IMG/VR virus record: IMGVR_UViG_3300011113_000640
Location: 256,542-320,541 of that record
Length of the DNA stretch: 64,000 nt
Strand: one strand, 5' to 3'
Position 1 is the stretch's first letter; each line of letters opens with the position of its first letter. Positions 13,560-28,888 of this stretch are shown one piece after another. The notes beneath the pieces are model-generated. The model searched no databases and was not told the origin of the DNA. It saw only the letters and a list, made by a program, of their open reading frames with translations. The translations under genes and the position numbers were made by a program.

Positions 13560-13617
13560 GCGTCGATTTGAATGCCGACGTCGGAGTGATCCGGCGTTGC
13601 AGGATTTATTTATATGT

Positions 13618-13782: not shown

Positions 13783-13799
13783 AGTTGTTTCCTTGTTAA

Positions 13800-13883
13800 T
13801 GGTGCCCCCGGGGTGAATCGAACACCCTTTGAGTTTCCTCGACGGATTACAAATCCGTTGCAATCCCACTATGCGACAGGGGC
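13800..13883 (-). tRNA. tRNA-Thr(UGU) with a long variable arm
   Basis: GCCCCTG/CGGGGGC acceptor, ACGGA-TTTGTAA-TCCGT anticodon arm, 14-nt variable region, TTCGATT T loop, encoded CCA. Confidence 0.85.
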
Positions 13884-13896
13884 TTGGTTGTGATCA

Positions 13897-14367: not shown

Positions 14368-14585
14368 GATTGCTCCGGGGATATTTGATCAGCCATGTCA
14401 ATTGCAGGCTCTTTGTAGCCAGCTCTGCGTTTCAACAAGTCGATCCTGCGTTGAATTTTGGCCTGTTTCTTATTGGCCTGTGTTTTTTCTTTTAATTCGG
14501 TGAGTTGCTTTACACTGAGACTGACGATCCGGACCTCACCGTTTTTGGTGTAGCCAGGTTTTTTGCGATTGAGAGTTTTTGCCAT
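14364..14585 (-). CDS. Small basic hypothetical protein
   Basis: 73 aa Lys/Arg-rich ORF. Confidence 0.65.
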   Translation of the reverse strand: MAKTLNRKKPGYTKNGEVRIVSLSVKQLTELKEKTQANKKQAKIQRRIDLLKRRAGYKEPAIDMADQISPEQS

Positions 14586-14640
14586 GATTGTGATCCTGTT
14601 TGATAATTTTACTTAGTGTTATCACGGCAAGTTTTTAAAA

Positions 14641-15492
14641 TTATTGACATTCCTGCCAGGTCCAAAATCCGTTGTAAAATTCCGGCAAACGCCGGGCTGT
14701 TGGATCCCACGAAAACAGGAATTTTTTTCCAGCCCGAGGAACTAGTAATTTTTGTGGCGGAGGCCAATCGGTGGTATAGCTTATGCCTAGACATGGCAAT
14801 CCTTGATAACTGGTATGATCTTTGACAACCACCGTGGCAGATTTGTATTCTGTGAGATCCAAAACGAACTCAATTTTTTGATCACAGGTGCCGGGTCCAA
14901 TCTTGACTATGCCGTCAAATGTTTGACTGGGTTTTATCAAGTTTGTGTTGTTCACAGCATCGTAAAAACCTCGGGGCAAGGAATCATAGTTCAGCATGAC
15001 TCTTGGTTGGCAGTCTGATAAATTGTTATCGAGCTGACCTTCGTAGACCGCAACATCTATGGCCCAGACATCAGGCACACTGACGTAAGGTGTTTTGAAT
15101 ATCTGGTTGGCATGACTCCAGATTTTTTTCATGGTTGAGTTGGTTATAAACTGACATCCTAAGGGTTCGCACAGAAAAATGTCAATATTTTGGGGAACAT
15201 CGTCGGGAGTCAGTGAGAGAAAATCAGCAGTGCTCACTGAGTGCCTGCCATGGTATCCTGCGTGATCCAGGATGTCACGGGTCAACGCAGTTCTGGCCGA
15301 TCTAACGTCAACTCCGTAGTAGTGGCTGGCACCAAATTCAAGACAGTATGCACCCAGCAAACCAACGCCGGTGCCTACTTCGAATACAGTTCGATCTTTG
15401 ACAAGATTTTTAAGGATTTCTCGATACCAATTAGATCTAGGTGTATCATTGATGTAGGTCAAGGCCACATTTACTTCAGGATGTCTTATCAT
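14641..15492 (-). CDS. Class I SAM-dependent methyltransferase, PRMT-like
   Basis: INDTPRSNWY pre-motif, VFEVGTGVGLL motif I, DIFLCEPLG. Confidence 0.75.
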   Translation of the reverse strand: MIRHPEVNVALTYINDTPRSNWYREILKNLVKDRTVFEVGTGVGLLGAYCLEFGASHYYGVDVRSARTALTRDILDHAGYHGRHSVSTADFLSLTPDDVPQNIDIFLCEPLGCQFITNSTMKKIWSHANQIFKTPYVSVPDVWAIDVAVYEGQLDNNLSDCQPRVMLNYDSLPRGFYDAVNNTNLIKPSQTFDGIVKIGPGTCDQKIEFVLDLTEYKSATVVVKDHTSYQGLPCLGISYTTDWPPPQKLLVPRAGKKFLFSWDPTARRLPEFYNGFWTWQECQ

Positions 15493-16078
15493 GATCTAGG
15501 TTGACCCATGTGGTTATTTCTCCTATGCAAGTATTGGATTTAGAATTTATACAAAGTTCTAGCTGGCTGATAATATCTTGGACATTGACGCCATGGCCAG
15601 TCCAAGTAGGTCTGGAACGACCTATGGGAGTATCCAGTCTATCTACTGTTATCAAACTGGTACGAAAATTTACCTGGCCAATTCGAAAGGCCTGAGTCCA
15701 TTGTAGACTTGCATGTTTGAGAGCCGCCTTGTTGGAATTGTAGCTTTCCCAACCCGGAAAAGGTGCAGATGTATCTTCACTGCCCACCCCACCTATGTTT
15801 ATGATATGTCCACCCTTGCCACGTTCTTGCCACAGCATAGCCACTTCGGTCAGCAGCTGAGTTTGACCATATAGTGTTTGGCTTTGACCAAACACTCCAT
15901 CATAGGCGTTGTTGACGAATACATCATAATTCAAACTGAGTTCGGCTATCTTAGCACGCTGGGTCAAAATATCATGACCGGTTGATCTACTGACACTGGT
16001 GGCATCAAACTTTTTAACCAATTCTAAACCCAGACCTTGGTTGCCACCTGTGACTAGAAAAGTTTTGAGATTGGCCAT
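15476..16078 (-). CDS. Short-chain dehydrogenase/reductase
   Basis: TGGNQGLG, VFVNNA, YNSNK (YxxxK). Confidence 0.85.
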   Translation of the reverse strand: MANLKTFLVTGGNQGLGLELVKKFDATSVSRSTGHDILTQRAKIAELSLNYDVFVNNAYDGVFGQSQTLYGQTQLLTEVAMLWQERGKGGHIINIGGVGSEDTSAPFPGWESYNSNKAALKHASLQWTQAFRIGQVNFRTSLITVDRLDTPIGRSRPTWTGHGVNVQDIISQLELCINSKSNTCIGEITTWVNLDHDKTS

Positions 16079-16084
16079 TTAATT

Positions 16085-16160
16085 TGGTACACCCAAGGGG
16101 ATTCGAACCCCTGTTGCAGCCGTGAAAGGGCCGAGTCCTGGGCCTCTAGACGATGGGTGC
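16085..16160 (-). tRNA. tRNA-Glu(UUC)
   Basis: 76-nt cloverleaf, CGGCC-CTTTCAC-GGCTG anticodon arm, GGTTCGAATCC, encoded CCA. Confidence 0.95.
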
Positions 16161-16163
16161 ATG

Positions 16164-16322
16164 TTACTTCATTCTCAACTGCTGAGCAAATTTTTTGACA
16201 ATCAGATTTGCCTTCTTGTTGGATTCTGTGATGCTTCTGCTGGCAGCCGATCGTTTTTCGGTCTTGGTCCACTGTCCAGCGATAGTTCTGCTTAGTTCAC
16301 CTGCACTTTGACGCTTTGCCAT
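16164..16322 (-). CDS. Small basic protein (52 aa; not in ORF track)
   Basis: Read manually: MAKRQSAGELSRTIAGQWTKTEKRSAASRSITESNKKANLIVKKFAQQLRMK. Confidence 0.65.
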   Translation of the reverse strand: MAKRQSAGELSRTIAGQWTKTEKRSAASRSITESNKKANLIVKKFAQQLRMK

Positions 16323-16324
16323 GT

Positions 16325-16546
16325 TTATTTTACCTTTATCAAATAATCAGTCATATTAAAAGTGCCACTCTGTACTTCTTTGAGTGCATCAATGGGCGTG
16401 ACCCAAGAGTTGGTTTCTCGAGCCCGGCGCTTCATTTCTCTCAGTCGTTGCGCAGCAGCGATCACAAGATCATATCGGCCGCCGGCATAGGCCACACAGC
16501 GTTCGGTATCAATTTCACTGCTACGACTTTCGATTCTGGTGCTCAT
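16325..16546 (-). CDS. rpoZ: RNA polymerase omega subunit homologue
   Basis: RYDLVIAAAQRLREM ... ALKEV matches the RpoZ core pattern. Confidence 0.75.
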   Translation of the reverse strand: MSTRIESRSSEIDTERCVAYAGGRYDLVIAAAQRLREMKRRARETNSWVTPIDALKEVQSGTFNMTDYLIKVK

Positions 16547-16568
16547 GACTTCTCCTTGTAAAAAGTTA

Positions 16569-16597
16569 ATTATACACTAAAATATGGCGCTGGTCAA
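16569..16597 (-). promoter_or_regulatory. Sigma70-type promoter for the rpoZ operon
   Basis: TTGACC-17 bp-TATAAT. Confidence 0.8.
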
Positions 16598-16615
16598 ACA
16601 CTTTATAAATATCCA

Positions 16616-17332
16616 ATGTGCCCGCAACACCTTAGTTCACATTTTGCCAATCAAGAACTTAATTGGATTCAGACTGACTCATATGAACAATATCAAAAAA
16701 ATCTCATTGAAAAACAAGATGAACTAGAACAGTTTGGTTGGATCGATCAAACTTTTACCTATCGATATAACAGTCAAGGATTCAGAAGTGCCGAGTTTGA
16801 AGAATCTGTTCCCAGTGCGATGTTTCTTGGATGTAGCCACACGCTGGGAGTAGGATTACCTATGGAAGCTACCTTTTCGCACATAGTCAGCACCAGTTTA
16901 AATCTTAAAAATTTCAATCTGGGTGTTCCGGGTAGTAGCAATGATACTGCATTCCGTTTGGCGCATTATTACATTCCTCGATTGAAACCAACCATTGTGG
17001 TTTTTCTATCAACTGAACGAACCAGATTTGAATTGTTTACAGAAAACAACGAAAACGATATTTTATCCTATAACAACATGACCAATTCTCTTCAATTTGT
17101 CAGAGAAGAGTTGAAGCTATTTTATCGTCATTGGATAATGAATAACAACAACGTTGATATGCATTATGCAAAAAATGTTGGAGCCATTCAACAGCTATGT
17201 TCTGCAAACAATATCAAATTTTATCACAGAGAATTTTTAAAGTTTCCGTTGATAGACAAAGCAAGAGATCTAGCGCACTATGGAATTAAATCTAACAATA
17301 TTGTCGCCAAGAAAATTCTAGCAGATCTTTAA
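16616..17332 (+). CDS. SGNH-hydrolase-like hypothetical protein
   Basis: FLGCSHTLG, NLGVPGSSND and D..H near the C-terminus; preceded by TATAAATA at 16604-16611. Confidence 0.55.
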   Translation: MCPQHLSSHFANQELNWIQTDSYEQYQKNLIEKQDELEQFGWIDQTFTYRYNSQGFRSAEFEESVPSAMFLGCSHTLGVGLPMEATFSHIVSTSLNLKNFNLGVPGSSNDTAFRLAHYYIPRLKPTIVVFLSTERTRFELFTENNENDILSYNNMTNSLQFVREELKLFYRHWIMNNNNVDMHYAKNVGAIQQLCSANNIKFYHREFLKFPLIDKARDLAHYGIKSNNIVAKKILADL

Positions 17333-18267
17333 CCTATTAGCTTGGCCAGGTGTGATCTATTGTAGCGAGCAATAGTTTGTAAATTGTCAATGATGTCAAT
17401 GGTAGACATTGTTTCTTTCATGGCTTGCCATCTAGCCGGCCCTTCGAGTCGATCGTAGCTTTCATCCCAACAACTACTATAAGTTTGGAATCCAATATCT
17501 TGTAACCTTTTTAAATAATTTCGCGGACCATAAACCAACACAGGCTTGCCAGCCATGATAGGCCTTACAGTTTTTTCAGTGGGAAAGAATGTATCACCCA
17601 GTGTATATGTTTCGGCAACAATTTCAATTTGGAATTGATTGTAGTAACCTAGTATGCCGCTGTTGGTCTTTGGCTCTCTGACAAATTGATCTCTAACCCT
17701 GTGTCCGTCAATGCTGGTAACTGGACAACAAGTAAGCCACCCAATAATGTCGGTGTTGAGCCAATCATCGGGTTTTTCTAAATTAATTGGAGCAGTTTCT
17801 TTGATCCAAGGCGGCGCCTCGTCTGTGTTCATAACACTTAACAATGTGTTTCCTTGTTGCCAAAGATCATAGAGTATTCTTGCTCGAGCAAAAGTTCTGC
17901 GACCCATAAAGTAGCCAAACAAGCAAGCACCATCGGCAACAGGTGCAACATCGGTCCAGTACTTGCGGCTCATTTCAAAAAAATGACTAAGGGAGACTTT
18001 ACCTATGTTTAAATTTGCGTACGGTGTTTGCTCGTGCATGTTAGGATTTCTAGCAATACTGATTGTTTTGGGGTCTCTGCCGGTGGCAACACAGTGTTGA
18101 TTTAACATGTCCACAATGCCCAGTGCTTGCATGCTAGGACCTTCATAACGGAAATCTATTTCGACATGGGCAGAAGGATCAATATTGCTGAGACAATTTT
18201 TAACCTCCGCTGGGTTGCTCCAAGAATCTCCACACACTCTTAAAGGAATAACAATCGGTTTATTCAA
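17329..18267 (-). CDS. Putative glycosyltransferase with GT10-like C-terminal motif
   Basis: IEIVAET...FFPTEKTVRPIMAGKP. Confidence 0.45.
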   Translation of the reverse strand: MNKPIVIPLRVCGDSWSNPAEVKNCLSNIDPSAHVEIDFRYEGPSMQALGIVDMLNQHCVATGRDPKTISIARNPNMHEQTPYANLNIGKVSLSHFFEMSRKYWTDVAPVADGACLFGYFMGRRTFARARILYDLWQQGNTLLSVMNTDEAPPWIKETAPINLEKPDDWLNTDIIGWLTCCPVTSIDGHRVRDQFVREPKTNSGILGYYNQFQIEIVAETYTLGDTFFPTEKTVRPIMAGKPVLVYGPRNYLKRLQDIGFQTYSSCWDESYDRLEGPARWQAMKETMSTIDIIDNLQTIARYNRSHLAKLIG

Positions 18268-18314
18268 ACTACTCTTTGCTTTCTTTTTTCAATATTTAAT
18301 AATTATAGTTAATC

Positions 18315-18391
18315 TGGTGCCCCGGGAAGGATTCGAACCTTCAACAGCTCCCTTCTGAGGAGAGTGCGTCTACCTGTTGCGCCACCGGGGT
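18315..18391 (-). tRNA. tRNA-Leu(CAG) with a short variable loop
   Basis: CTCTC-CTCAGAA-GGGAG anticodon arm, Leu-like D arm, 5-nt variable loop, A73, encoded CCA; A1-C72 mismatch. Confidence 0.85.
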
Positions 18392-18397
18392 TGACCT

Positions 18398-18988
18398 TTA
18401 CGTTACTTGCGTGGTACCGTTGCCGTTTTTAAAACCAATCTCGCCACCTTCTGCTTCAATCCTTTTGATCACATCTTCAAACAGGATAGGAGCAAAGTCG
18501 GTTTGTTCCACGCACACGCAATGATAACGAACATCAACTATGTCGGTGATCTTGCCATTGAATCCTGGCAACATCACCCGGTTGGCATGCAAGTGCCCGT
18601 GGATGTTGACACCAAAGCGACCAAGGCTTTCTGAGTGAATAGGAATATGGCTGAGTATCATGCCATTCATCACATGGTATCCACGCAGGCTACGGAAGTA
18701 AGGAGTGTAATCCTCATCCTTAAAGATATCGTGATTACCACGGATAAGAATCTTGTCACCATTGAGTCTATTCATAATAGGTAAACTCTTGCGGTTGATC
18801 ACTACATCACCCAAGTGATATACTTTATCGTTTGGACGCACACGCTCGTTCCAGGCCCGGACCATGAACTCGTCCATTTCGTTGGGATCTGTCCAAGGGC
18901 GAAGTTTTGTAACTCCATCGTTACGTGTGAAGCGACATACACCTGCGTGACCAAAGTGCGTATCGCTGACTAAAAATACTGCTGGCAT
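18398..18988 (-). CDS. Calcineurin-like metallophosphoesterase
   Basis: DTHFGH, HLGD, GNHD, GHLH motifs; start MPAVFLVSD. Confidence 0.9.
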   Translation of the reverse strand: MPAVFLVSDTHFGHAGVCRFTRNDGVTKLRPWTDPNEMDEFMVRAWNERVRPNDKVYHLGDVVINRKSLPIMNRLNGDKILIRGNHDIFKDEDYTPYFRSLRGYHVMNGMILSHIPIHSESLGRFGVNIHGHLHANRVMLPGFNGKITDIVDVRYHCVCVEQTDFAPILFEDVIKRIEAEGGEIGFKNGNGTTQVT

Positions 18989-19013
18989 AAGTGCCTCCTT
19001 TCTTTGTAAAACA

Positions 19014-19087
19014 TGGCGCCGGTCTAAGGAATCGAACCTCAATTAACGGTTTTGGAGACCGCTGTAATGCCATTATACCAGACCGAC
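19014..19087 (-). tRNA. tRNA-Trp(CCA)
   Basis: GCGGT-CTCCAAA-ACCGT anticodon arm, G73, encoded CCA. Confidence 0.95.
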
Positions 19088-19093
19088 CAAACT

Positions 19094-19171
19094 TGGAAGT
19101 GAGGGTGAGATTCGAACTCACGGCTTTAGGGATTTGCAGTCCCTTGCATTGGGCCACTCTGCCACCTCACT
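19094..19171 (-). tRNA. tRNA-Cys(GCA)
   Basis: AGGGA-CTGCAAA-TCCCT anticodon arm, U73, encoded CCA. Confidence 0.95.
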
Positions 19172-19254
19172 GTAATAAGCTCATAACAAAAATGTATTGG
19201 ATCCCTGGCAAAATCGCATATCGAATGCGATATATATTACTAGGAGTTATACAC

Positions 19255-19416
19255 ATGGAATACATTTTAACCTTATTTGTTTACTTCAACGGAGATCTCA
19301 TCCGTAAACTGGAACAACCAGTGGCCACTGCGGCCGTATGTCAACAACTCAGTGCAGGTCTCAACTTCCGTGATCCTGCTGTGACAGCCTTTGCCACTTG
19401 TCGTCCCAGATCATAA
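19255..19416 (+). CDS. Small protein inserted antisense within the tRNA cluster
   Basis: TAGGAG RBS then MEYILTLFVYFNG...TCRPRS (53 aa). Confidence 0.6.
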   Translation: MEYILTLFVYFNGDLIRKLEQPVATAAVCQQLSAGLNFRDPAVTAFATCRPRS

Positions 19417-19417
19417 T

Positions 19418-19491
19418 TGGTTGCGGGTGACGGAGTTGAACCGCCAACTGGAGCTTATGAGACTCCCGAGATACCATTTCTCTAACCCGCG
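19418..19491 (-). tRNA. Initiator-type tRNA-Met(CAU) with non-canonical anticodon stem
   Basis: C1-A72 mismatch, G2-C71, C3-G70, A11-U24, A73; anticodon stem GGAGT/GCTCC. Confidence 0.85.
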
Positions 19492-19497
19492 TCTGTT

Positions 19498-19671
19498 TCA
19501 CTGTTCCTGTTCCATTCTACGGAACTGTTCCTGCGCCCGAATCATAGCAGACGCACGATCGATCTTGTTCTGAAACAGTTGTTGCTTTTGTGCTTCGGTC
19601 AAGAATGCCGAACTCACATCATAAGCCTGTTTCACAATAGCGTCGTTGAGTTTTTTGTAATCAATTGACAT
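19498..19671 (-). CDS. Small hypothetical protein (57 aa), first gene after the attenuator
   Basis: Start MSIDYKKL with strong AGGAAAGGA RBS. Confidence 0.7.
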   Translation of the reverse strand: MSIDYKKLNDAIVKQAYDVSSAFLTEAQKQQLFQNKIDRASAMIRAQEQFRRMEQEQ

Positions 19672-19690
19672 CTTTTTCCTTTCCTCTATA

Positions 19691-19724
19691 AAATAAAAAA
19701 CCCCGGAGTGTTTAGTTCCAGGGC
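19691..19724 (-). terminator. Intrinsic terminator (attenuator terminator)
   Basis: GCCCTGGA-9 nt loop-TCCGGGGT followed by TTTTTATTT. Confidence 0.8.
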
Positions 19725-19750
19725 TTTTGAATATCGTATGATGTTTCGTA

Positions 19751-19852
19751 CTATTCCGTGCCCTGAATCTCATCCTCGCAAATCTGCCATAGACCAACCA
19801 CCTCATTGAAGTTGGGTTGTGGTACAAGATAGGTCACTTTGCGATTCAACAT
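19751..19852 (-). CDS. Putative leaderless leader peptide (33 aa)
   Basis: MLNRKVTYLVPQPNFNEVVGLWQICEDEIQGTE; ATG is the 7th nt after the TATAAT box. Confidence 0.6.
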   Translation of the reverse strand: MLNRKVTYLVPQPNFNEVVGLWQICEDEIQGTE

Positions 19853-19858
19853 AGTAGT

Positions 19859-19887
19859 ATTATATAGAGTTATTTATATCTTGTCAA
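19859..19887 (-). promoter_or_regulatory. Consensus sigma70 promoter with TATAAATA late motif in its spacer
   Basis: TTGACA-17 bp-TATAAT; TATAAATA at 19871-19878. Confidence 0.9.
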
Positions 19888-19902
19888 CCGGGTTTGGTCA
19901 AC

Positions 19903-19933
19903 AAAAAAGCCCCCGGGGGAGCTTTTTTTTTTT
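19903..19933 (-). terminator. Terminator after the porin gene
   Basis: GC-rich inverted repeat flanked by A and T tracts. Confidence 0.75.
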
Positions 19934-19949
19934 GGATCACTTTTAAAAA

Positions 19950-20690
19950 TTAATTAAAAGTTTTTGTCAAGCCAACTACCACGGCATTCTTGTAGAGCTT
20001 TTGACCGCTCACAGTGTTTGCAGTTTCAAAAGTTCTTGTTGTGCCAGAGTTGGTGAAATACTTTACACTGACGTCAAAGTCTTTGGGTAGACTGTAAACA
20101 AAACCAGCATTGATGTCATTGTAATCGTAGGCTGTGCTGTTGGCCACATTGGTACGACCATAGTGTGCTACAACAGCCAGATTCTTGATCACAGGAACTG
20201 GTAACTTGCCATCTGCTTGCACGTAGGTTGTGCCTTGAGCATTGGCTGTACCGAAATAGCCATCTCCCAAGGTTCTGCTATACTTGGCAGAAATGATGTC
20301 TTTGTAACCTAGGCCGACATAGCCTTCATAGGTGTCAAAGTTTGAACCAGTTTTTGCTGAAGTGGTGGCACGTGGATAGAAATAGTTGTAGCTACCGATG
20401 TCGATCGAGATGCCCTTGAAGATTTCTTTCTTGTAACCAGCGTAGAGATCACTCTCTACACCTGCACCATTGGTGTAGACTTGGCTAGAAACACTGCTGT
20501 TCCAGTTACCAATGTACAAGCCACTCTTGTGTGCATAGTCGATGCCGCCCTGAACTGCAGGAGCATTTTGGGTTTGGCTAACACCGCGGAAACGGTAGTC
20601 GCTGGTCAAACCTAAATTGCCGGTGAGTTGAGCTTGAGCCGAGGCAACAAAGCCAGCGGACAAGGCCAATGCTAATAATAATTTTTTCAT
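19950..20690 (-). CDS. TorF-family putative porin (TIGR02001-like outer-membrane protein)
   Basis: Signal peptide, SDYRFRGVSQT, PAVQGGIDY, terminal aromatic beta-strand (TKTFN). Confidence 0.85.
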   Translation of the reverse strand: MKKLLLALALSAGFVASAQAQLTGNLGLTSDYRFRGVSQTQNAPAVQGGIDYAHKSGLYIGNWNSSVSSQVYTNGAGVESDLYAGYKKEIFKGISIDIGSYNYFYPRATTSAKTGSNFDTYEGYVGLGYKDIISAKYSRTLGDGYFGTANAQGTTYVQADGKLPVPVIKNLAVVAHYGRTNVANSTAYDYNDINAGFVYSLPKDFDVSVKYFTNSGTTRTFETANTVSGQKLYKNAVVVGLTKTFN

Positions 20691-20766
20691 GCTTGAAGTT
20701 TCCTTTTAAAAGAATGCTGGGTGATCACCCAACTCTTTATTTAGTGGTTTTTACTTAGTGACCAAC

Positions 20767-20793
20767 AAAAAAGCCTGATTTCTCAGGCTTTTT
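20767..20793. terminator. Bidirectional terminator
   Basis: AAAAAAGCCTGA-TTTC-TCAGGCTTTTT. Confidence 0.85.
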
Positions 20794-20814
20794 ATTTTGA
20801 AACAACAAAAACTA

Positions 20815-21369
20815 TTAGAAATTCCGAGTATAATTAAAATTTATAATTTTTTGATCTACATCACCTTGCACACGATCATATCTTACACCAATTGTATCTT
20901 TTTTGGTAACAGCATAACCTACTCCGGCTCTCCAGGTGCGAGTAGTATCGTTCATGGCAGTGTTAAATGGAGTGCGAAAACGCCAGCCAGCACGAACAGT
21001 AAAGCCTGATGAGCCAAATGGAGCGGTAACCCCGGGTTCTACGCTATAGTATCCATAACTGCCAGTGCTGATATATCGTTCGCCAACACCTGTGCGAGTG
21101 TACAAGGTCGCAAACTTTGTCGGCAACAATCCAGTTACTCCGGCTTCAAGGCGAGTGCTGGCCAATGCATTGCTACCATTTTGGTTGATTTGTAAAACTC
21201 CTACATCACCAAGAAAGTTTTTGTTGATGTTTTCTCTGACTGCCAAGCTCCAACTGTTTTGATCTGCTGATTTGACATTGTCGACATTGCCATATTCGAC
21301 CGTGGCGGATCCTGCGTGGACCAAACCTGCGGCAAACACCAAACTTAGAATAGTTAATAGTTTTTTCAT
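20815..21369 (-). CDS. Outer-membrane beta-barrel protein
   Basis: Signal peptide, alternating amphipathic strands, C-terminal FNYTRNF BAM-type motif. Confidence 0.75.
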   Translation of the reverse strand: MKKLLTILSLVFAAGLVHAGSATVEYGNVDNVKSADQNSWSLAVRENINKNFLGDVGVLQINQNGSNALASTRLEAGVTGLLPTKFATLYTRTGVGERYISTGSYGYYSVEPGVTAPFGSSGFTVRAGWRFRTPFNTAMNDTTRTWRAGVGYAVTKKDTIGVRYDRVQGDVDQKIINFNYTRNF

Positions 21370-21436
21370 AATTGTCCTTAAAGGTAATTTAATGATATCG
21401 TATCTAGATTTAGTTATGACTCAAGATTAACGGATC

Positions 21437-21462
21437 AAAAAAAACCCGCCGAAGCGGGTTTT
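21437..21462 (-). terminator. Terminator after tmRNA
   Basis: AAAACCCGC-TTCG-GCGGGTTTTTTTT. Confidence 0.9.
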
Positions 21463-21464
21463 GA

Positions 21465-21745
21465 CATTTTTGGTAACAAGGCATGTCTGCCCCGGAGATC
21501 ATGCCGCTAAGGCAAAGACCTCGTCGTTAGCTGCGTTTGCAGTTATCATTTTGCTTCTACGACCAGGCTTTCCCAGTCCTAACGGGTTTCGCATTCCCGT
21601 GTTGCCGTCCGCATTGGCTCACCATGTCGATCCTGATTCATCCCCACCCAAGCATACTGGACAATACACTTGGGTGGAGATGCTGGGATTTGCACCCAGG
21701 TCCATAGTGCCTTCACTTGGAAGGGATTACAACAATTCGAAAAAC
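21465..21745 (-). ncRNA. ssrA: Circularly permuted two-piece tmRNA (outer ends approximate)
   Basis: Acceptor piece (T arm CTGGG-TGCAAAT-CCCAG, CATCTCCA) precedes the coding piece (5' GGGGATG at 21645); G3-U70 pair; tag ORF ANAANDEVFALAA* at 21499-21540. Confidence 0.9.
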
Positions 21746-21746
21746 G

Positions 21747-22004
21747 TTAACTCAACTTACGTGCCATTTGAGGCGCTGGCGTAAACGAATTCACTATAGC
21801 CAAATAACCGTCGGCTGACGCTTCAGTGCTGAATAATCTTATAAAATTGTCTGAGTAAGTGATTCCGTCTGAATTTGTAGTCGTCTGAGTATTAACTGAC
21901 ATGGTAACCGCTGCCACGGCTGGATCAGTGAGATATGCACTTAATTGATTCGTTTCTGCTTCAGTGCGAGCACGTCCGTAAATAACTTCTGTAAAATATA
22001 GCAT
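21747..22004 (-). CDS. Hypothetical protein
   Basis: 85 aa, AAGGA RBS, TATAAATA upstream at 22029-22036. Confidence 0.65.
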   Translation of the reverse strand: MLYFTEVIYGRARTEAETNQLSAYLTDPAVAAVTMSVNTQTTTNSDGITYSDNFIRLFSTEASADGYLAIVNSFTPAPQMARKLS

Positions 22005-22088
22005 GGCAATTCCTTATATTAATGTTGTTATTTATACGAACTCAAGATATACGAACTCAAGACTTATGTTTGGATTAACAATCAAATC

Positions 22089-22261
22089 CTACTTGCCAAA
22101 CAAATGAGCCACAATGCCCATGCCCACAAATACTGTCATGGCCGCAACGGCCGCCCAGGGGATGTTTTTTAATATGTTCATTGCTCGTCCTGATGTTCGT
22201 TGATCCACATGATACCATAACAAACTACCACAGCCAACAAGGCAAAAAATATCAACCACAT
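22089..22261 (-). CDS. Two very small hydrophobic ORFs (22178-22261, 27 aa; 22089-22181, 30 aa)
   Basis: Read manually; ATGA-coupled; each a single TM-like segment. Confidence 0.5.
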
Positions 22262-22263
22262 GA

Positions 22264-22455
22264 TTAATTATAGCCTTTTATGTGATTGTTGTCAATCGGG
22301 GGATTTCCTCGGGCCATGACATTTTCTAACTGCCGGGCACGATCACGTTCGGGCGGCAACGGACCACAACCCAGTCTTGCCCACTCGTCTTCGGAGTAGT
22401 AATAGCGTTCCACGGGCGGTTTCTTTTGCTGTTCCACGGTCATCGTATTTACCAT
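22264..22455 (-). CDS. Small hypothetical protein
   Basis: 63-aa ORF after tRNA-Ile2. Confidence 0.6.
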   Translation of the reverse strand: MVNTMTVEQQKKPPVERYYYSEDEWARLGCGPLPPERDRARQLENVMARGNPPIDNNHIKGYN

Positions 22456-22459
22456 GTTT

Positions 22460-22534
22460 TGGTAGGCCTTGAAAGAATTGAACTTTCACTCCATCGATTA
22501 TGAGTCGATTGCTTTACCATTAAGCTAAAGGCCC
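22460..22534 (-). tRNA. tRNA(CAU), most likely Ile2 (lysidine type)
   Basis: GGGCCTT acceptor, ATCGA-CTCATAA-TCGAT arm resembling bacterial Ile2, paired 1-72, encoded CCA. Confidence 0.85.
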
Positions 22535-22543
22535 AATAATTGT

Positions 22544-22572
22544 ATTGTAGCATCATGGCCCATAGTTGTCAA
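22544..22572 (-). promoter_or_regulatory. Sigma70 promoter for tRNA-Ile2, overlapping the amidohydrolase 3' end
   Basis: TTGACA-17 bp-TACAAT. Confidence 0.75.
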
Positions 22573-23530
22573 GCCTGTCACGCAAACCAAGGTAATTTTT
22601 GAAATAAAGAAGATCCTTTTGTTGAGCGGTAATGGGCAAAGATTCTACTGTGTTTACATCATGCAAGCTGTTGGCACCGCCCATGTCTCGGTCATGTGGC
22701 CAGTCTGTGGCAAACAACATGCGATTCCATCCCAATAGTTCGGCATTTTCAATAAAACCCGGCATTTCTGGTTCGGTGGTAAACCAAAAATTTCTGCGGA
22801 GATATAGCATGGGATCTGCAAATCCCAACTCCAGCATGCGGTCCTGCAGTTCATAGATCCAGTTGGTATCACGTTCGGCAATTACAATTTTGAGATCGGG
22901 GTAGCGATCCAGGGTTCCACCAATGATAAGGCTGGCTATGGTTCTTTTCCAAAAATGATGTGCTGGCCAGATTTCTTTAAGTAGTTGTAGTTCTTTGGCC
23001 CAGATGCTGGTGTCAGATTCAATAACGTCATTGATTTCGGTATGGTGCAGATACACCGGCATTTTTGTCTTGGCTATTTTCGCAAACAACACATCGTATT
23101 CTGGCATGAATCCCCAGGCTGGTGTTTCGCTCAAAAACACAGCCAAAAAATTCTGTTCAGCACGCAGTTCTAATTCTGCCAGGCTAGCCGTTAGATCCTG
23201 CAGGGCCAACCAAATAGTGGCACTGAAACCAGAGTTGTGGCTGACAATTTGATGCAGGTGTTCATTGTAGATCTGCATGACTTTGCGACCCACGTGTTTG
23301 GGTAATCTATAGTTGATGTTCAAACTGATGCCCATGAAGTTCAGCAACTGGTGATCAATTTTGAGTGCAGAGAATTCTTTCAGGCGATCATCGATATTGG
23401 TATAGCTGTGTCGTTTTTTTTCACAATACTGCTGATACCATTCCTGTATGTCAGGATGATCAAACACCGCAGGTGGAGGAGTATAGTGTGCATCAGCGTC
23501 AATGATCATATGATATTTATTGTTGTTCAA
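22553..23530 (-). CDS. Amidohydrolase family 2 metallo-hydrolase
   Basis: DADAH, YLHH, MLFATDWPH motifs. Confidence 0.85.
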   Translation of the reverse strand: MNNNKYHMIIDADAHYTPPPAVFDHPDIQEWYQQYCEKKRHSYTNIDDRLKEFSALKIDHQLLNFMGISLNINYRLPKHVGRKVMQIYNEHLHQIVSHNSGFSATIWLALQDLTASLAELELRAEQNFLAVFLSETPAWGFMPEYDVLFAKIAKTKMPVYLHHTEINDVIESDTSIWAKELQLLKEIWPAHHFWKRTIASLIIGGTLDRYPDLKIVIAERDTNWIYELQDRMLELGFADPMLYLRRNFWFTTEPEMPGFIENAELLGWNRMLFATDWPHDRDMGGANSLHDVNTVESLPITAQQKDLLYFKNYLGLRDRLDNYGP

Positions 23531-23898
23531 GGCCCGTAGTTGTCAAGAAATTGTTCCAAATTACCGTAGAGATTGACCATGACCGCTTCTCGGCTTCCAA
23601 AAAACACTATCTTTTTGGGTATGCCTTTGGTTGCCGAAATATAGTAAGGCATCTGCATTTTTCTATCCAATTTGAGCATGAGACGCTTGTTGAACGTCAA
23701 GGGATCTGTGATGGCATACTCGTAGTGCTCAAGATCCAACCGCCGAGACAATACATCATATCCAATGCCGGTCAAGCGCATGCCACCGGTACGTCTGATG
23801 TTGAACCACCAACTTGGCAAAGCTGTGTCCACAGGCACACGATCACTTTCGGGCAAGAGCTCGATGAGTTGTTGAGTCAGTAGATGTTTGTCACGCAC
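23527..23898 (-). CDS. Hypothetical protein (GTG start inferred)
   Basis: Longer ORF-track start overlaps the next gene; WWFNIRRTGGMRLT core. Confidence 0.65.
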   Translation of the reverse strand: MRDKHLLTQQLIELLPESDRVPVDTALPSWWFNIRRTGGMRLTGIGYDVLSRRLDLEHYEYAITDPLTFNKRLMLKLDRKMQMPYYISATKGIPKKIVFFGSREAVMVNLYGNLEQFLDNYGP

Positions 23899-23899
23899 A

Positions 23900-24187
23900 T
23901 CAAGGATATACCTGATCACCGGCTCGTAGCAACACCACGGTGAATCGGTCGGTCTTGAACTGTGTGTTGAGTTTCTTGGCCAAGTTGCGGGCATGTCCAG
24001 GATTGCTGAAACTAACCTTTTTGTATTTGGGCCCAGGATACTGCACCAGGAGATTTGATGTTTTGAGATTGATGGGTTGATTGTCAAAGAACACAGCCCA
24101 GATACCTTCACTGGCCAGGACCTGTTCGGTCTTGTAAGTGGTCTTGTTGGTGTGTTCGATCAACACCGTGGGTTTTGGGCGACTCAT
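23900..24187 (-). CDS. Hypothetical phage protein
   Basis: 95 aa, MSRPKPTVL...YKKVSFSNPGHA. Confidence 0.75.
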   Translation of the reverse strand: MSRPKPTVLIEHTNKTTYKTEQVLASEGIWAVFFDNQPINLKTSNLLVQYPGPKYKKVSFSNPGHARNLAKKLNTQFKTDRFTVVLLRAGDQVYP

Positions 24188-24232
24188 GTCATTATATTCC
24201 TATATTTTATTTATCTAAAAATATGGGTATAT

Positions 24233-24439
24233 TTAGAATGTGCCGCCTCCTATTTTGACCTCTACAACAGGCTCTTGACCAATTTTGTTAATTCGATCAT
24301 GTAAAACATGTAGCTCAGCCAACAGTCTGGTGATATCTGCATGCAGGGCACGGGCATCCGTCATGCTCATCACAAAGTCTCGATTGCCACGAGCATCATG
24401 CCCTTCTACTCGGTCAATGAACTTATTGAGATGAAGCAT
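24233..24439 (-). CDS. Hypothetical protein
   Basis: 68-aa ORF in operon. Confidence 0.65.
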   Translation of the reverse strand: MLHLNKFIDRVEGHDARGNRDFVMSMTDARALHADITRLLAELHVLHDRINKIGQEPVVEVKIGGGTF

Positions 24440-24881
24440 CGCCGGCTTGTTGTTCGGTGTAGAATGGCCCTTGATAGGGATATCGTTGTAGCACTATGAG
24501 TTTGGGAGCCAACACAGTGCGCCAATGACGTCCGCGGCGCACATTGTACCAACCTGCGGCAAACCACGATTTGCTCTTGGTTGTTTTGGTGTACACCGGC
24601 AACTGTTGCGGAACGTCCCACATGGGATTATGCACACGGCCTGCCACGGGATAACCATGCACATGGTCTAGCACTGCCCGAGGTCGAGTTTTTTTGATTG
24701 CAGGTTCAAACTGTATGTTCACCCGCTGTGCTGCCAGGCGTATGGTCTTGAACTGTGCTATCTGATTGTTGATCTTGACCTGATAACCGCCGGCACAGGC
24801 TTCCACATTGCCAACCTTTTGATCTCCGTCTTGCAAGATCCAAAACTTTTTGTCTATCACGGGTTTAGCTATTAGTTTCAT
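24423..24881 (-). CDS. Hypothetical protein
   Basis: Start MKLIAKP adjacent to the RNase H stop. Confidence 0.7.
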   Translation of the reverse strand: MKLIAKPVIDKKFWILQDGDQKVGNVEACAGGYQVKINNQIAQFKTIRLAAQRVNIQFEPAIKKTRPRAVLDHVHGYPVAGRVHNPMWDVPQQLPVYTKTTKSKSWFAAGWYNVRRGRHWRTVLAPKLIVLQRYPYQGPFYTEQQAGDASSQ

Positions 24882-27652: not shown

Positions 27653-28888
27653 TTATAGTCTGGTATTACCGTAATGTACTACAGTTATTCCCGGTGCGTC
27701 AACCATTTTGCGCCATGGATCGACCACAACTGATCCTGGCAAAATTGGGCAGTATGGTAGTGTGTCTGGAGTATTGCCAGTGTATTCGTATGTGATCTTG
27801 CGATTGTGTGCCCATAAGAACACCGCAGGATAATCCAAAGCGTCTACCACTTCGTCTCGGTTGTCTGCAAGCGGATCGACATAGACCACAGGCAAGCCTG
27901 CTTCCTTGATATAAAATCCAACCAGGGTTGAGTATGAGCCAATGCAATATTCTACATCTGGCTTGTAGGCTTTACCGTGTATCACAACAGGCAAATTGTA
28001 TTTCTTGGCTTGTTCGACCAAAAATAATGCCAAGTTTTTTGCTTGAACTTCTCTGGCATGCATCACAGTATCAAACAGGTCGTATCCAATGTTGTATTCT
28101 TCGGCCAACCAACGCAGAGCAATGTTGTCGCGGGGATGGCATGCACCTGCATCGCCCATGCCGGCGGTCATGTACTTGGGTCCCATGATACGCATGGTGC
28201 TACGGGCCAAGGCATTGGTCACAACATCCACATTGATATTGCCAATCTTCAAGGCAAAGTCCTGGATCATGTTTACCAAGCCAACCTTGGCACTAATAAA
28301 TGTGTTGTAGAAAATCTTGATAGCTTCGCATTCGTCCCATGTGCCAATTTCATAGCGTGGATTGTTCTGCATGATGGTTTCATACAAGTCGTGAAGTTCA
28401 CCGGCAACACCGGTCAAACTACCATCTTCGGTGCCCAACATGATCATTTCTGGGTTGACCATGTCCCACTTTACACTGCCCATGGCAATCAAGTAAGGGT
28501 TATAAACAAACTCGTGTCGGGCATCTAATAAAGGAACAAACTTCTTGCGAGTAGTTCCTGGCAATACTGTGCTAATTAGCACCACTTTCTTGGGCGTGGT
28601 AGCGTACTGATTTACATTTTTAATAGCATCAACAACAGCATCGTGACCAAAGTCTCGAGGAGTCATATGGCTTGACGGAACACTGCCATCGTAGCCTTCG
28701 GCATGTGGAGTGGGCACTGCAATAAAGATCCACTCGCTTTTGTCGACTAATTCTTCAATGCTACATACTTTTACACTATCGCTGGTGCGTGGGTAAATGT
28801 CGTAACCGCGTACTTCATGCTTTTCAGCAAATACTTCGGCACAGTCTAGCCCAAGTTTACCTATACCAATAAATCCTATTTTAGCCAT
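27653..28888 (-). CDS. UDP-glucose/GDP-mannose dehydrogenase family protein
   Basis: GIGKLG, AVPTP, IKIFYNTF, AGACHPRD (catalytic Cys), AYKPDV. Confidence 0.9.
   Translation of the reverse strand: MAKIGFIGIGKLGLDCAEVFAEKHEVRGYDIYPRTSDSVKVCSIEELVDKSEWIFIAVPTPHAEGYDGSVPSSHMTPRDFGHDAVVDAIKNVNQYATTPKKVVLISTVLPGTTRKKFVPLLDARHEFVYNPYLIAMGSVKWDMVNPEMIMLGTEDGSLTGVAGELHDLYETIMQNNPRYEIGTWDECEAIKIFYNTFISAKVGLVNMIQDFALKIGNINVDVVTNALARSTMRIMGPKYMTAGMGDAGACHPRDNIALRWLAEEYNIGYDLFDTVMHAREVQAKNLALFLVEQAKKYNLPVVIHGKAYKPDVEYCIGSYSTLVGFYIKEAGLPVVYVDPLADNRDEVVDALDYPAVFLWAHNRKITYEYTGNTPDTLPYCPILPGSVVVDPWRKMVDAPGITVVHYGNTRL

What the first reader, a model, noticed from the sequence alone, without database searches (positions are those of the whole stretch)
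21465..21745. Phage-encoded circularly permuted two-piece tmRNA
Seen: the acceptor piece precedes the coding piece, separated by a 29-nt hairpin-forming intervening segment (21646-21674). The G3-U70 alanine determinant is present, CCA is not encoded (ACCC), the tag is ANAANDEVFALAA, and a strong terminator follows. Established: permuted tmRNAs occur in alphaproteobacteria, some betaproteobacteria and some cyanobacteria. Inference: the phage supplies its own ribosome rescue, complementing the tRNA operon, and the tag points to a proteobacterial host. No smpB is present in this window.
Basis: partly seen in the sequence, partly recalled or inferred. Interest (0 to 1): 0.6.

Follow-up and report, generated by a model that had tools for sequence, protein, structure and literature searches.

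The report
Jumbo-phage two-piece tmRNA gene
A 320-kb uncultivated phage carries a real, evolutionarily conserved gene for a split ("two-piece") tmRNA, the RNA that frees stalled ribosomes and tags unfinished proteins for destruction. Phage genes of this kind are already described, so this is a solid but fairly ordinary example.

Summary
On the minus strand, about 21437-21764, lies a circularly permuted tmRNA gene. ARAGORN calls it. Rfam beta_tmRNA scores 129 bits (cut-off 84) and tmRNA_permuted 118 bits (cut-off 47).

The acceptor half precedes the coding half. G3:U70 is present, ACC is followed by C, the tag is ANAANDEVFALAA, and a 9-bp terminator follows. The intervening segment is 27 nt, not 29.

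The window is the end of a 320.5-kb IMG/VR jumbo-phage record. That record has no SmpB, CCA-adding enzyme, ArfB, Pth or integrase.

Related phages (DNA polymerase 76-96 % identical) carry the same gene, including both complete genomes tested. Across viral homologues the stems covary: 92.6 % of cells are paired, against 45-52 % in slid controls. The tag differs from a relative's by six synonymous and no non-synonymous codons.

The gene is therefore under selection as both an RNA and a coding frame. It most likely works with host SmpB, AlaRS, RNase P and CCA-adding enzyme.

In trees it belongs to a large, diverse virus-borne branch of the betaproteobacterial type. It is not a recent capture from any sampled bacterium.

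Phage two-piece tmRNAs and huge-phage tmRNAs are published, so this is a new member of a known kind. Processing, expression and host remain untested.

The parts
21437..21764 (-). Whole permuted tmRNA (ssrA) gene with its terminator. This is the precursor as modelled by Rfam beta_tmRNA plus the T-run.
   Evidence: ARAGORN; RF01850 129.3 bits; RF04321 117.6 bits.
21673..21734 (-). Acceptor piece. Helix-1 5' strand UGUUG at 21734-21730. Local hairpin CCUUC/GAAGG at 21724-21710. P2a 5' strand at 21709-21703. T stem-loop at 21699-21683, with T loop UGCAAAU at 21694-21688. Acceptor 3' strand CAUCUCC at 21682-21676. ACC at 21675-21673. The true 5' end is not determined.
   Evidence: Covariation of helix 1, P2a, T stem and acceptor stem.
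21646..21672 (-). 27-nt intervening segment that must be removed for the RNA to be charged. Together with the discriminator and CC it extends the acceptor stem into one continuous helix of about 19-20 bp in the precursor.
   Evidence: The extension helix is 93.5 % paired across 18 viral homologues, and the base after ACC covaries with its partner.
21463..21645 (-). Coding piece. Acceptor 5' strand GGGGAUG at 21645-21639 (G3 pairs with U). D-loop analogue at 21638-21627. P2a 3' strand at 21626-21620. Helix-1 3' strand CAACA at 21604-21600. Hairpin at 21599-21583. Extra hairpin at 21578-21561. Tag frame. 3' hairpin at 21487-21463 with the conserved loop GCCUUGUUACCAAAA.
21499..21540 (-). Tag reading frame: GCA resume codon to TGA, encoding ANAANDEVFALAA. 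A UAA lies at -5 to -3 before the first GCA, the position of the UAG before the E. coli resume codon. Use of the third codon (also GCA, same frame) as the resume codon cannot be excluded.
   Evidence: Versus L200: 6 synonymous and 0 non-synonymous codon differences, with a different stop codon.
21437..21462 (-). Intrinsic terminator: 9-bp stem with 5 GC pairs, a 4-nt loop and a run of eight T.
   Evidence: It is also modelled as the last helix of RF01850.
21747..22004 (-). 85-aa ORF with an AAGGA ribosome-binding site. Its stop codon is 13 nt before tmRNA helix 1, so the tmRNA is probably cut out of a longer transcript. The promoter that abuts bacterial beta-type genes is missing here.
   Evidence: 21 model positions in the promoter part of RF01850 are gapped. 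No family match.
22264..22455 (-). 63-aa ORF of unknown function, conserved just upstream of the tmRNA in many related viral contigs. A perfect TTGACA-17-TATAAT promoter (22295-22267) lies in its 3' end and is the nearest strong promoter upstream of the tmRNA.
22460..22534 (-). tRNA-Met(CAU), with CCA encoded and its own near-consensus promoter at 22572-22544. It is the syntenic upstream neighbour of the tmRNA in several relatives.

Best explanation
This is a functional phage-encoded ssrA gene for a two-piece (circularly permuted) tmRNA of the betaproteobacterial structural type.

Shown:
- The gene has every sequence and structure feature of such an RNA.
- It is kept in related jumbo phages.
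- Its helices covary and its tag is conserved at the peptide level.

Inferred mechanism:
1. It is transcribed on the minus strand from an upstream phage promoter recognised by host RNA polymerase, probably together with small ORFs. Transcription ends at the terminator at 21462-21437.
2. Host RNase P cuts 5' of G1 (21645). Host 3'-processing nucleases trim to ACC (21673), and the host CCA-adding enzyme adds the missing A. This removes the 27-nt spacer.
3. The acceptor piece and the coding piece stay together through the acceptor stem and the P2 helices.
4. Host AlaRS charges the RNA through G3:U70 and A73.
5. With host SmpB and EF-Tu it enters ribosomes stalled on broken mRNAs.
6. Translation resumes on the tag frame, adding (A)NAANDEVFALAA and ending at UGA. 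The ALAA end directs the product to host ClpXP-type proteases.

Likely benefit to the phage: it keeps ribosomes free and recycles amino acids while host mRNAs are being destroyed and host ssrA expression may fail. This complements the phage's seven tRNAs.
For: - Identification: ARAGORN and two Rfam models well above threshold.
- Phage context: 320.5-kb virus record estimated 93 % complete, T4-type polymerase nearest to jumbo phages, no integrase.
- Conservation: 9 of 16 related records have a permuted tmRNA, including both records at least 90 % complete. The 7 without it are fragments estimated 8-58 % complete. Synteny with tRNA-Met, orf63, orf184 and Gcw_chp is kept.
- RNA-level selection: 41 pairs over 18 viral sequences are 92.6 % paired, against 45-52 % when slid. 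21 pairs show changes on both sides. 0 of 500 shuffles reach the observed values. G3:U70 is kept in 18 of 18.
- Peptide-level selection: window versus L200 has 6 synonymous and 0 non-synonymous codon differences. ALAA is encoded by 23 different 12-mers among 30 viral tags.
- Precursor fold: -120 kcal/mol, z = -4.5.
- Dependence on the host: no SmpB, CCA-adding enzyme, RF-1/ArfB domain or Pth in the record.
- Early-type expression is plausible: sigma-70-like promoters are enriched in 13-24.5 kb (43 found, against 21.3 +/- 5.8 expected), with perfect ones at 22295-22267 and 19887-19859.
- Precedent: two-piece tmRNAs in phages (PMC9004378) and tmRNAs in huge phages (PMC7162821).
Against: - No expression, end-mapping or tagging data exist.
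- The T loop is UGCAAAU, with G where nearly all tRNAs and all 24 sequences on the bacterial side of the first tree have U55. This could alter folding or SmpB binding.
- The window scores far below bacterial members on the beta model: 129 bits against 169-313.
- No promoter abuts the gene, so the 5' end of the acceptor piece is undefined.
- A pseudoknot upstream of the resume codon was not established.
- The host is unknown, so compatibility with its SmpB and AlaRS is assumed.
- The record is 'linear' and estimated 93 % complete, so a missing SmpB gene cannot be fully excluded.
Confidence: 0.8

Rival explanations
1. The RNA is a working tmRNA, but its main role is regulatory or targeted tagging rather than bulk ribosome rescue. 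Examples would be timing the infection by sensing stalled ribosomes, or marking particular host or phage products with a phage-specific tag, here extended to 13 residues and up to 30 residues in relatives.
For: - The extended tag ANAxNDExFALAA occurs in no GTDB species representative.
- Viral tags range from 10 to 30 residues with many non-canonical bodies.
- A small conserved ORF always sits upstream.
- The literature raises sensing and selective degradation as possibilities.
Against: - The part of the tag that matters for proteolysis (ALAA) is canonical.
- Nothing in the sequence shows target specificity.
- tmRNA recruitment is mRNA-end driven in all studied systems (established knowledge).
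- The neighbour ORF has only synteny in its favour.
Confidence: 0.1
2. The RNA acts as a decoy that titrates host SmpB or blocks host trans-translation, like the tRNA-like-domain-only molecule of mycobacteriophage DS6A, and the tag frame is not used.
For: - The phage encodes no SmpB.
- The T loop and D loop are unusual.
- There is precedent for an inhibitory tRNA-like-domain-only RNA (PMC4131195; PMC11915505).
Against: - A complete tag frame with resume codon and stop is kept.
- It evolves by synonymous change: 6 synonymous and 0 non-synonymous codons.
- G3:U70 is invariant.
- Neither would be maintained in a pure decoy.
Confidence: 0.05
3. The gene is a passenger with no function in the phage: host DNA captured or mis-assembled into the contig, an attachment-site remnant of an integrative element, or a decaying pseudogene.
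For: - tmRNA genes are common integration sites, and fragments occur in prophages.
- Three of the viral contigs with the pattern (L086, L155, L171) carry sequences nearly identical to bacterial ones; in all, seven viral contigs sat on the bacterial side of the first tree.
Against: - The gene is complete, not a 3' fragment.
- No tyrosine integrase is in the record.
- Phage genes and tRNAs flank it on both sides.
- Two complete genomes with terminal repeats have it.
- Covariation and synonymous change show purifying selection.
- The nearest bacterial sequences are only about 70 % and 64 % identical over the two modules.
- The plus-strand ORFs over it match no family.
Confidence: 0.03

Closest known systems
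Betaproteobacterial two-piece tmRNA (Rfam RF01850; the 'third lineage' of permuted ssrA: Rhodocyclales-type bacteria such as Azonexus, Dechloromonas, Thauera)
   Same: - Gene order: acceptor half, short spacer, coding half.
- P2 helices, T arm, G3:U70, and ACC followed by a non-A base.
- ANDExFAxAA-like tag.
- Conserved 3' loop CCUUGUuACcAAA, and a terminator.
- With alpha-type sequences as outgroup, the window groups with the beta type.
   Different: - Scores 129 bits against 169-313 for bacteria.
- About 70 % and 64 % identity over the two modules.
- Lacks the abutting promoter.
- Three extra residues at the start of the tag, seen in no bacterial species representative.
- T loop with G55.
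- An extra hairpin at 21578-21561.
- Carried by a phage without smpB.
Two-piece tmRNAs of marine phages (Methylophilales phage Melnitz, pelagimyophages; Buchholz et al. 2022, PMC9004378)
   Same: - Phage-borne permuted ssrA with no phage SmpB reported.
- Proposed to keep the hijacked translation machinery running.
- 53 two-piece calls among 18,146 phage genomes.
   Different: - Melnitz's is of the alphaproteobacterial type and carries a glutamine riboswitch.
- Here the type is beta.
- No riboswitch or other Rfam family is found in the window.
- The carrier is a 320-kb jumbo phage with no nucleotide match among 50,697 GenBank phage records.
tmRNAs (and SmpB) of huge phages (Al-Shayeb et al. 2020, PMC7162821)
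   Same: Large phage genome with tRNAs and a tmRNA as part of a translation-support repertoire.
   Different: Some huge phages also encode SmpB and release or recycling factors. None of SmpB, an RF-1 domain or Pth was found here.
Caulobacter two-piece tmRNA (Keiler, Shapiro and Williams 2000; cited)
   Same: The mechanistic model is the same: one precursor, cut by tRNA-processing enzymes into two base-paired RNAs that tag proteins.
   Different: It is a different structural type (alpha) and is chromosomal with a cognate SmpB. It has been shown experimentally; nothing has been shown here.
One-piece tmRNAs of mycobacteriophages (Bxz1 group) and Bacillus phage G; tRNA-like-domain-only RNA of phage DS6A (PMC4131195)
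   Same: Phage-encoded ssrA-type genes.
   Different: Those have the standard gene order or lack a tag frame. The window's gene is permuted and has a full tag frame.

Membership tests
tmRNA (ssrA), permuted / two-piece form | tRNA-like domain: a 7-bp acceptor stem built from two distant strands, plus a T arm | tested here: met
   ARAGORN structure and Rfam alignments. Acceptor and T stems are 100 % paired with compensatory changes in 18 viral homologues.
tmRNA (ssrA), permuted / two-piece form | Alanine identity: G3:U70 wobble pair and discriminator A | tested here: met
   GGGGAUG pairs with CAUCUCC, followed by A. G:U at this pair in 18 of 18 sequences.
tmRNA (ssrA), permuted / two-piece form | Circular permutation: the 3' acceptor half lies upstream of the 5' half, separated by a spacer that must be excised | tested here: met
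   3' half at 21710-21673, spacer at 21672-21646, 5' half at 21645-21619. Spacer lengths in homologues range from 24 to 215 nt.
tmRNA (ssrA), permuted / two-piece form | Tag reading frame: alanine resume codon, short ORF, stop, hydrophobic ...LAA end | tested here: met
   GCA to TGA encoding ANAANDEVFALAA. 6 synonymous and 0 non-synonymous codon differences versus L200.
tmRNA (ssrA), permuted / two-piece form | Score above the curated thresholds of the family models | tested here: met
   RF01850 at 129.3 bits against 84; RF04321 at 117.6 bits against 47.
tmRNA (ssrA), permuted / two-piece form | Mature RNA consists of two pieces with a free 3' CCA | not testable with these tools
   ACC is encoded and the next base is C. 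17 of 18 bacterial beta-type genes also lack the A, whereas 29 of 43 viral ones encode it. No RNA data.
tmRNA (ssrA), permuted / two-piece form | Canonical T loop (U54-U55-C56) and D-loop GG | tested here: inconclusive
   The T loop is UGCAAAU, with G at position 55; the D loop keeps GG. G55 is shared by 16 of 43 viral sequences and 0 of 24 bacterial-side sequences. Its effect on function is unknown.
tmRNA (ssrA), permuted / two-piece form | Pseudoknot upstream of the resume codon | not tested
   Two hairpins lie there (21599-21583 and 21578-21561). No pseudoknot pairing was established.
Self-sufficient phage trans-translation module (tmRNA + SmpB, as in some huge phages) | An smpB gene on the same replicon | tested here: not met
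   PF01668 finds nothing at E <= 1 in the 320,541-bp record, while the same search rings in 12 control genomes (10 over the cut-off). The record is estimated 93 % complete.
ssrA fragment at an integrative-element attachment site | Partial 3' tmRNA fragment next to an integrase | tested here: not met
   The gene is complete. There is no PF00589 match in the record.
tRNA-like-domain-only tmRNA mimic (phage DS6A type) | No tag reading frame | tested here: not met
   A tag frame is present and conserved.

The most novel reading that the evidence does not exclude
The gene is one twig of a large, old, virus-borne lineage of beta-type permuted tmRNAs that has diversified inside phages rather than being repeatedly borrowed from hosts.

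Its marks would be:
- phage-specific tags of 10 to 30 residues;
- a recurrent T-loop G55 variant, paired with loss of the D-loop GG;
- encoded CCA in most members;
- spacers up to 215 nt;
- a conserved 63-residue partner ORF.

Under this reading, phage tmRNAs are a re-engineered tool with their own rules. Phages may also have carried the permuted gene form between the two separate betaproteobacterial groups that have it.
Probability: 0.2. Interest if true: 0.6.

Novelty: new member of a known kind. Interest (0 to 1): 0.35.

Why it matters
The gene adds a well-supported case of a jumbo phage investing in translation quality control while leaning on host SmpB, AlaRS, RNase P and CCA-adding enzyme.

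The wider point comes from the comparison set. At least 82 IMG/VR contigs from several phage groups carry permuted tmRNAs that cluster together and apart from bacterial ones. They show unusual tags and T loops.

If this virus-borne lineage is real, it offers:
- natural sequence variation for studying what a tmRNA tRNA-like domain and tag can tolerate;
- a marker for a widespread uncultivated phage group;
- a possible route for spread of the permuted gene form.

For this single window the result is mostly confirmatory.

Tried and rejected
- **Structure of the 63-aa neighbour.** Structure prediction was not accepting jobs. The atlas look-up gave only hypothetical-protein clusters below 0.9.
- **GenBank phages.** Nucleotide searches with the gene and with 20 kb around it found no match.
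- **Bacterial source of the extended tag.** A degenerate 42-nt pattern for ANAxNDExFALAA found nothing in 185,579 species genomes.
- **Host identification.**
  - The phage's Gcw_chp protein has 35-37 % identical homologues in two Rhodocyclales-type genomes and none in three small low-GC genomes with permuted tmRNA. This is not decisive.
  - I guessed that the small-genome bacteria nearest the viral sequences might be Polynucleobacter. That does not hold for G086, whose genus has a single species in the collection. I could not name these genomes, so the guess is dropped.
- **Direction of transfer.**
  - In free trees the two bacterial clades sit inside a viral bush.
  - Holding all bacteria together is not rejected (AU p = 0.22).
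  - Holding all 59 viral sequences together is as good as the free tree (AU p = 0.51).
  - Phage-to-bacterium transfer is therefore not supported.
- **T-loop G55 and D-loop GG.** The raw association is strong (Fisher p = 1e-7). Only two independent contrasts lie on supported branches, so co-evolution is not shown.
- **ClpP-family ORF elsewhere in the genome.** Its best PHROG match is a head maturation protease, so it cannot be tied to the tag.
- **BLAST of the RNA against bacterial genomes.** It mostly hit terminators, so covariance models and ARAGORN were used instead.

Full report
**Observation**

ARAGORN finds eight RNA genes in the window, all on the minus strand. They are seven tRNAs between 13800 and 22534 and one permuted tmRNA at 21408-21764 with tag ANAANDEVFALAA.

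Rfam confirms the tmRNA independently. beta_tmRNA (RF01850) scores 129.3 bits against a gathering score of 84 (E 4e-39) over 21439-21764. The general tmRNA_permuted model (RF04321) scores 117.6 bits against 47.

The detailed ARAGORN output and the sequence give the anatomy. I use a gene coordinate g, with window position = 21765 - g.
- The 3' tRNA half is g55-92 (21710-21673). It ends with acceptor strand CAUCUCC, discriminator A, CC, and then C.
- A 27-nt spacer is g93-119 (21672-21646).
- The 5' tRNA half is g120-146 (21645-21619). It starts GGGGAUG, so the third pair is G:U.
- The tag frame is g225-266 (21540-21499).
- A terminator with a 9-bp stem and eight T lies at 21462-21437.

The strand was not stated, the spacer is 27 nt rather than 29, and the 'tRNA operon' is really a scatter of tRNA genes among ORFs.

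**What carries it**

The window is the last 64 kb of a 320,541-bp IMG/VR virus record. That record is classed linear, is estimated 93 % complete, and has 45.9 % G+C. All eight RNA genes of the record lie in this window.

The DNA polymerase (54218-56875, minus strand) belongs to the T4-type family. Its nearest cultured relatives are jumbo phages:
- Sinorhizobium phage Phosso, 49 % identity;
- Agrobacterium phage Atu_ph07, 45.5 %;
- Rak2-like phages, about 42 %.

Neither the tmRNA region nor 20 kb around it has a nucleotide match among 50,697 GenBank phage records.

The following were not found anywhere in the record, while the same searches ring in the bacterial controls:
- SmpB;
- a CCA-adding enzyme;
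- an RF-1/ArfB domain;
- peptidyl-tRNA hydrolase;
- a tyrosine integrase.

One ClpP-family ORF exists outside the window. Its best viral family is a head maturation protease, so I do not connect it with the tag.

**Is it a working gene?**

Relatives of the polymerase at 78-96 % identity are abundant in IMG/VR.
- Of 16 related records searched with RF04321, nine have a permuted tmRNA above threshold. These include both records that are at least 90 % complete and have terminal repeats (337 kb and 364 kb).
- The seven without it are fragments estimated 8-58 % complete.
- Their tags are ANAANDEVFALAA, ANASNDEVFALAA, ANASNDETFALAA, ANDEQFALAA and ANDEKFLMAA. A tRNA-Met often lies just upstream, as in the window.

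An alignment of nine of these genes already shows compensatory changes in the acceptor and T stems. I then aligned the tRNA-like domain and P2 region of 18 viral homologues with short spacers and counted pairs for a structure taken from the Rfam alignment of the window.
- 92.6 % of 727 cells form standard pairs, against 45-52 % when the 3' partners are slid by one to three columns.
- 21 of 41 pairs show changes on both sides.
- No shuffle out of 500 reaches the observed values.
- The G:U at acceptor position 3 is kept in all 18.
- The helix formed by the spacer is 93.5 % paired. The base following ACC (A, C or U) covaries with its partner. The precursor therefore keeps a continuous helix through the future 3' end, which looks like a processing determinant.

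The precursor as a whole folds at -120 kcal/mol, z = -4.5.

At the coding level, the window and L200 encode the identical 13-residue tag. They differ in six codons, all synonymous, and use different stop codons. Among 30 distinct viral tags ending ALAA, those four residues are written by 23 different 12-mers.

The gene is thus under purifying selection both as a structured RNA and as a translated frame. That argues against a pseudogene, a decoy or a passenger.

The two plus-strand ORFs that overlap it match no protein family.

**How it most likely works**

These steps are inferred from the well-studied bacterial system.
1. The nearest strong promoters upstream are a perfect TTGACA-17-TATAAT at 22295-22267 and a near-perfect one before tRNA-Met at 22572-22544.
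2. The whole 13-24.5 kb block is enriched in such sites: 43 found, against 21.3 +/- 5.8 expected. This suggests early transcription by host polymerase.
3. An 85-aa ORF with a ribosome-binding site stops 13 nt before the first tmRNA helix. The promoter that abuts bacterial beta-type genes is missing, shown by a 21-position gap in the model alignment. The tmRNA is therefore probably released from a longer transcript that ends at the strong terminator.
4. RNase P would cut before G 21645. Nucleases would trim to ACC at 21673, and the host CCA-adding enzyme would add the A.
5. All seven phage tRNAs encode their CCA, but the tmRNA does not.
6. The two pieces remain paired, are charged with alanine, and act with host SmpB and EF-Tu.
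7. A UAA at -5 to -3 before the first GCA mirrors the E. coli arrangement, which favours that codon as the resume point. The third codon (also GCA, same frame) cannot be excluded. In either case the proteolysis signal ALAA is the same.

None of these steps could be tested.

**Where it comes from**

ARAGORN calls a permuted tmRNA in 82 of them. The same pattern found at least 120 bacterial contigs.

The bacterial permuted genes belong to Rhodocyclales-type betaproteobacteria: Azonexus, Dechloromonas, Thauera, Propionivibrio, Accumulibacter, Methyloversatilis and others. Their tags are ANDE[QRH]FA[ILV]AA.

The permuted form is patchy in bacteria.
- Only 4 of 151 sampled genomes of that GTDB order exceed the beta model's cut-off.
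- A second bacterial group with the permuted form consists of small (1.7-2.7 Mb), low-GC genomes in another family.
- In that family, 3 of 31 sampled genomes have it, including all nine species of one genus.

No bacterial species representative encodes the extended tag.

The window's nearest relatives are all viral. The best is the 337-kb phage G001, at 94 % and 76 % identity over the acceptor and coding modules. Bacterial sequences reach about 70 % and 64 %.

In maximum-likelihood trees:
- the window pairs with G001 with full support;
- alphaproteobacterial sequences sit on a long branch of 0.67 substitutions per site, with support 99/100 for the split;
- all viral and beta-type bacterial sequences group together, so the 'beta type' label holds;
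- both bacterial groups are tight clades, while the viral sequences form a much more diverse bush with an unresolved backbone.

Constrained trees were then compared with the free trees.
- A tree that holds all 59 viral sequences together is as likely as the free tree (AU p = 0.51).
- Holding all bacterial sequences together is also not rejected (AU p = 0.22).

The data therefore fit a single, old virus-borne lineage and do not show the direction of any transfer.

The lineage is not confined to one phage group. It occurs in phages whose polymerase is 76 % identical to the window's, in phages where it is 31-36 % identical, and in phages without a detectable homologue, including a complete 93-kb genome.

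The nearest cultured relative, Sinorhizobium phage Phosso, has an alpha-type permuted tmRNA in an unannotated gap of its GenBank record. Atu_ph07 and a Vibrio jumbo phage have none.

**Host**

The host is unresolved. The beta-type RNA and the ANDE..FALAA core fit a betaproteobacterial host, as does a phage copy of a proteobacterial outer-membrane family (Gcw_chp). However, the comparison of that protein with candidate genomes was not decisive. Phage Melnitz shows that the tmRNA type can mismatch the host.

**Comparison with what is known**

- Phage tmRNAs have been catalogued since the mycobacteriophage Bxz1 group and Bacillus phage G (PMC4131195).
- Huge phages are reported to carry tmRNAs, and some carry SmpB (PMC7162821).
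- Buchholz et al. counted 53 two-piece tmRNAs among 18,146 phage genomes, mostly aquatic (PMC9004378).
- The current tmRNA database lists 79 phage sequences (PMC11915505).

The finding is therefore a new member of a known kind. Four things are less familiar:
- the size and diversity of the viral beta-type lineage;
- the three-residue extension of the tag;
- the T loop with G at position 55;
- the conserved 63-residue ORF upstream.

**Side observations on the lineage**

G at T-loop position 55 occurs in 16 of 43 distinct viral sequences and in none of 24 on the bacterial side of the first tree. It goes with loss of the D-loop GG in 12 of the 16, whereas all 27 viral U55 sequences keep GG. Only two independent contrasts lie on well-supported branches, so this is a lead and not a demonstrated co-variation.

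The 63-aa ORF (22264-22455) has 126 homologue clusters, all unnamed and many on contigs of 280-360 kb. They share a nearly invariant core, YYYSEDEWxRLGCGPLPPERDR. Its link to the tmRNA is synteny only.

**Verdict**

- The mechanism is inferred with good confidence from conservation.
- Novelty is low to moderate.

Noticed in passing
window 22264-22455 (-): A 63-aa ORF between tRNA-Met and the tmRNA is conserved (57-82 % identity) just upstream of the permuted tmRNA in many viral contigs with different tags. It has 126 unnamed homologue clusters, many on 280-360-kb contigs, with a nearly invariant core YYYSEDEWxRLGCGPLPPERDR. It matches no Pfam or PHROG family. A perfect sigma-70-type promoter is written into its last codons.
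   Followed up: partly
window 21688-21694 (-) (T loop) and 21627-21638 (-) (D-loop analogue); L-loci: The T loop reads UGCAAAU, with G at position 55. G55 occurs in 16 of 43 distinct viral permuted tmRNAs and in none of 24 on the bacterial side of the first tree. It mostly goes with loss of the D-loop GG (raw Fisher p = 1e-7). Only two independent contrasts lie on supported branches, so co-evolution is unproven.
   Followed up: partly
L383 / L387 = PV764938.1:349596-350198 (-): Sinorhizobium phage Phosso is the nearest cultured relative by DNA polymerase. It has an alpha-type permuted tmRNA (RF01849 at 108 bits, RF04321 at 113 bits) with a very long spacer. It lies in a gap between CDS 479 and 480 and is not annotated in the record. 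ARAGORN does not call it.
   Followed up: partly
L085, L104, L106, L166, L173, L099, L191, L144, L148, L164, L208: Related viral tmRNAs encode very long tags of 26-30 residues, for example one ending ...FSARTAQRQTLAV. Some are in phages whose polymerase is 76-80 % identical to the window's. Tag lengths in the viral set run from 10 to 30 residues.
   Followed up: no
L203 / L204 (G006, G003), tmRNA at L204:1410-1928 (-): In the 364-kb complete relative, the spacer between the two tmRNA halves is 215 nt instead of 27. Rfam scores this gene slightly better as alpha type (57 bits) than beta, although it sits in the viral/beta group in trees.
   Followed up: no
window 13800-13883 (-): tRNA-Thr(UGU) is 84 nt long, with an extra stem-loop in the variable region and a weak D arm. 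This is unusual for a threonine tRNA.
   Followed up: partly
window 19950-20690 (-) and 20815-21369 (-): A Gcw_chp family protein (PF09694, 161 bits; a bacterial protein of unknown function, thought to be outer-membrane) and a 184-aa ORF of unknown function lie just downstream of the tmRNA. They are syntenic with it in several viral contigs. Gcw_chp is 90 % identical in L205, and L173 has two copies.
   Followed up: partly
window 13000-24500, e.g. 22295-22267 (-), 19887-19859 (-), 22572-22544 (-): The tRNA/tmRNA block is enriched in sigma-70-type promoter matches: 43 found, against 21.3 +/- 5.8 in shuffles. Two are perfect consensus promoters. This suggests an early region read by host RNA polymerase.
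   Followed up: partly
L368:1486-2064 (-) = G000:C1:73349-73870, outside the window: A 192-aa ClpP-family ORF (PF00574, 90.6 bits) stands alone among unknown genes. The best PHROG match is a head maturation protease, but ATP-dependent protease families also match.
   Followed up: partly
G086, G196-G197, G216-G223 (loci L369-L379): A second bacterial group has beta-type permuted tmRNA. Its genomes are small (1.7-2.7 Mb) and low in GC, and it belongs to a family where 28 of 31 sampled genomes lack the permuted form. Tags are ANDENFALAA and ANDESYALAA, and CCA is encoded. The distribution of the permuted form in this order is patchy.
   Followed up: partly
window 22553-23530 (-), 27653-28888 (-), 34753-36072 (-), 6561-7853 (-): Auxiliary genes near the RNA block: an amidohydrolase (PF04909), a UDP-glucose dehydrogenase-like protein, an aminotransferase, and a 430-aa HNH endonuclease.
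   Followed up: no
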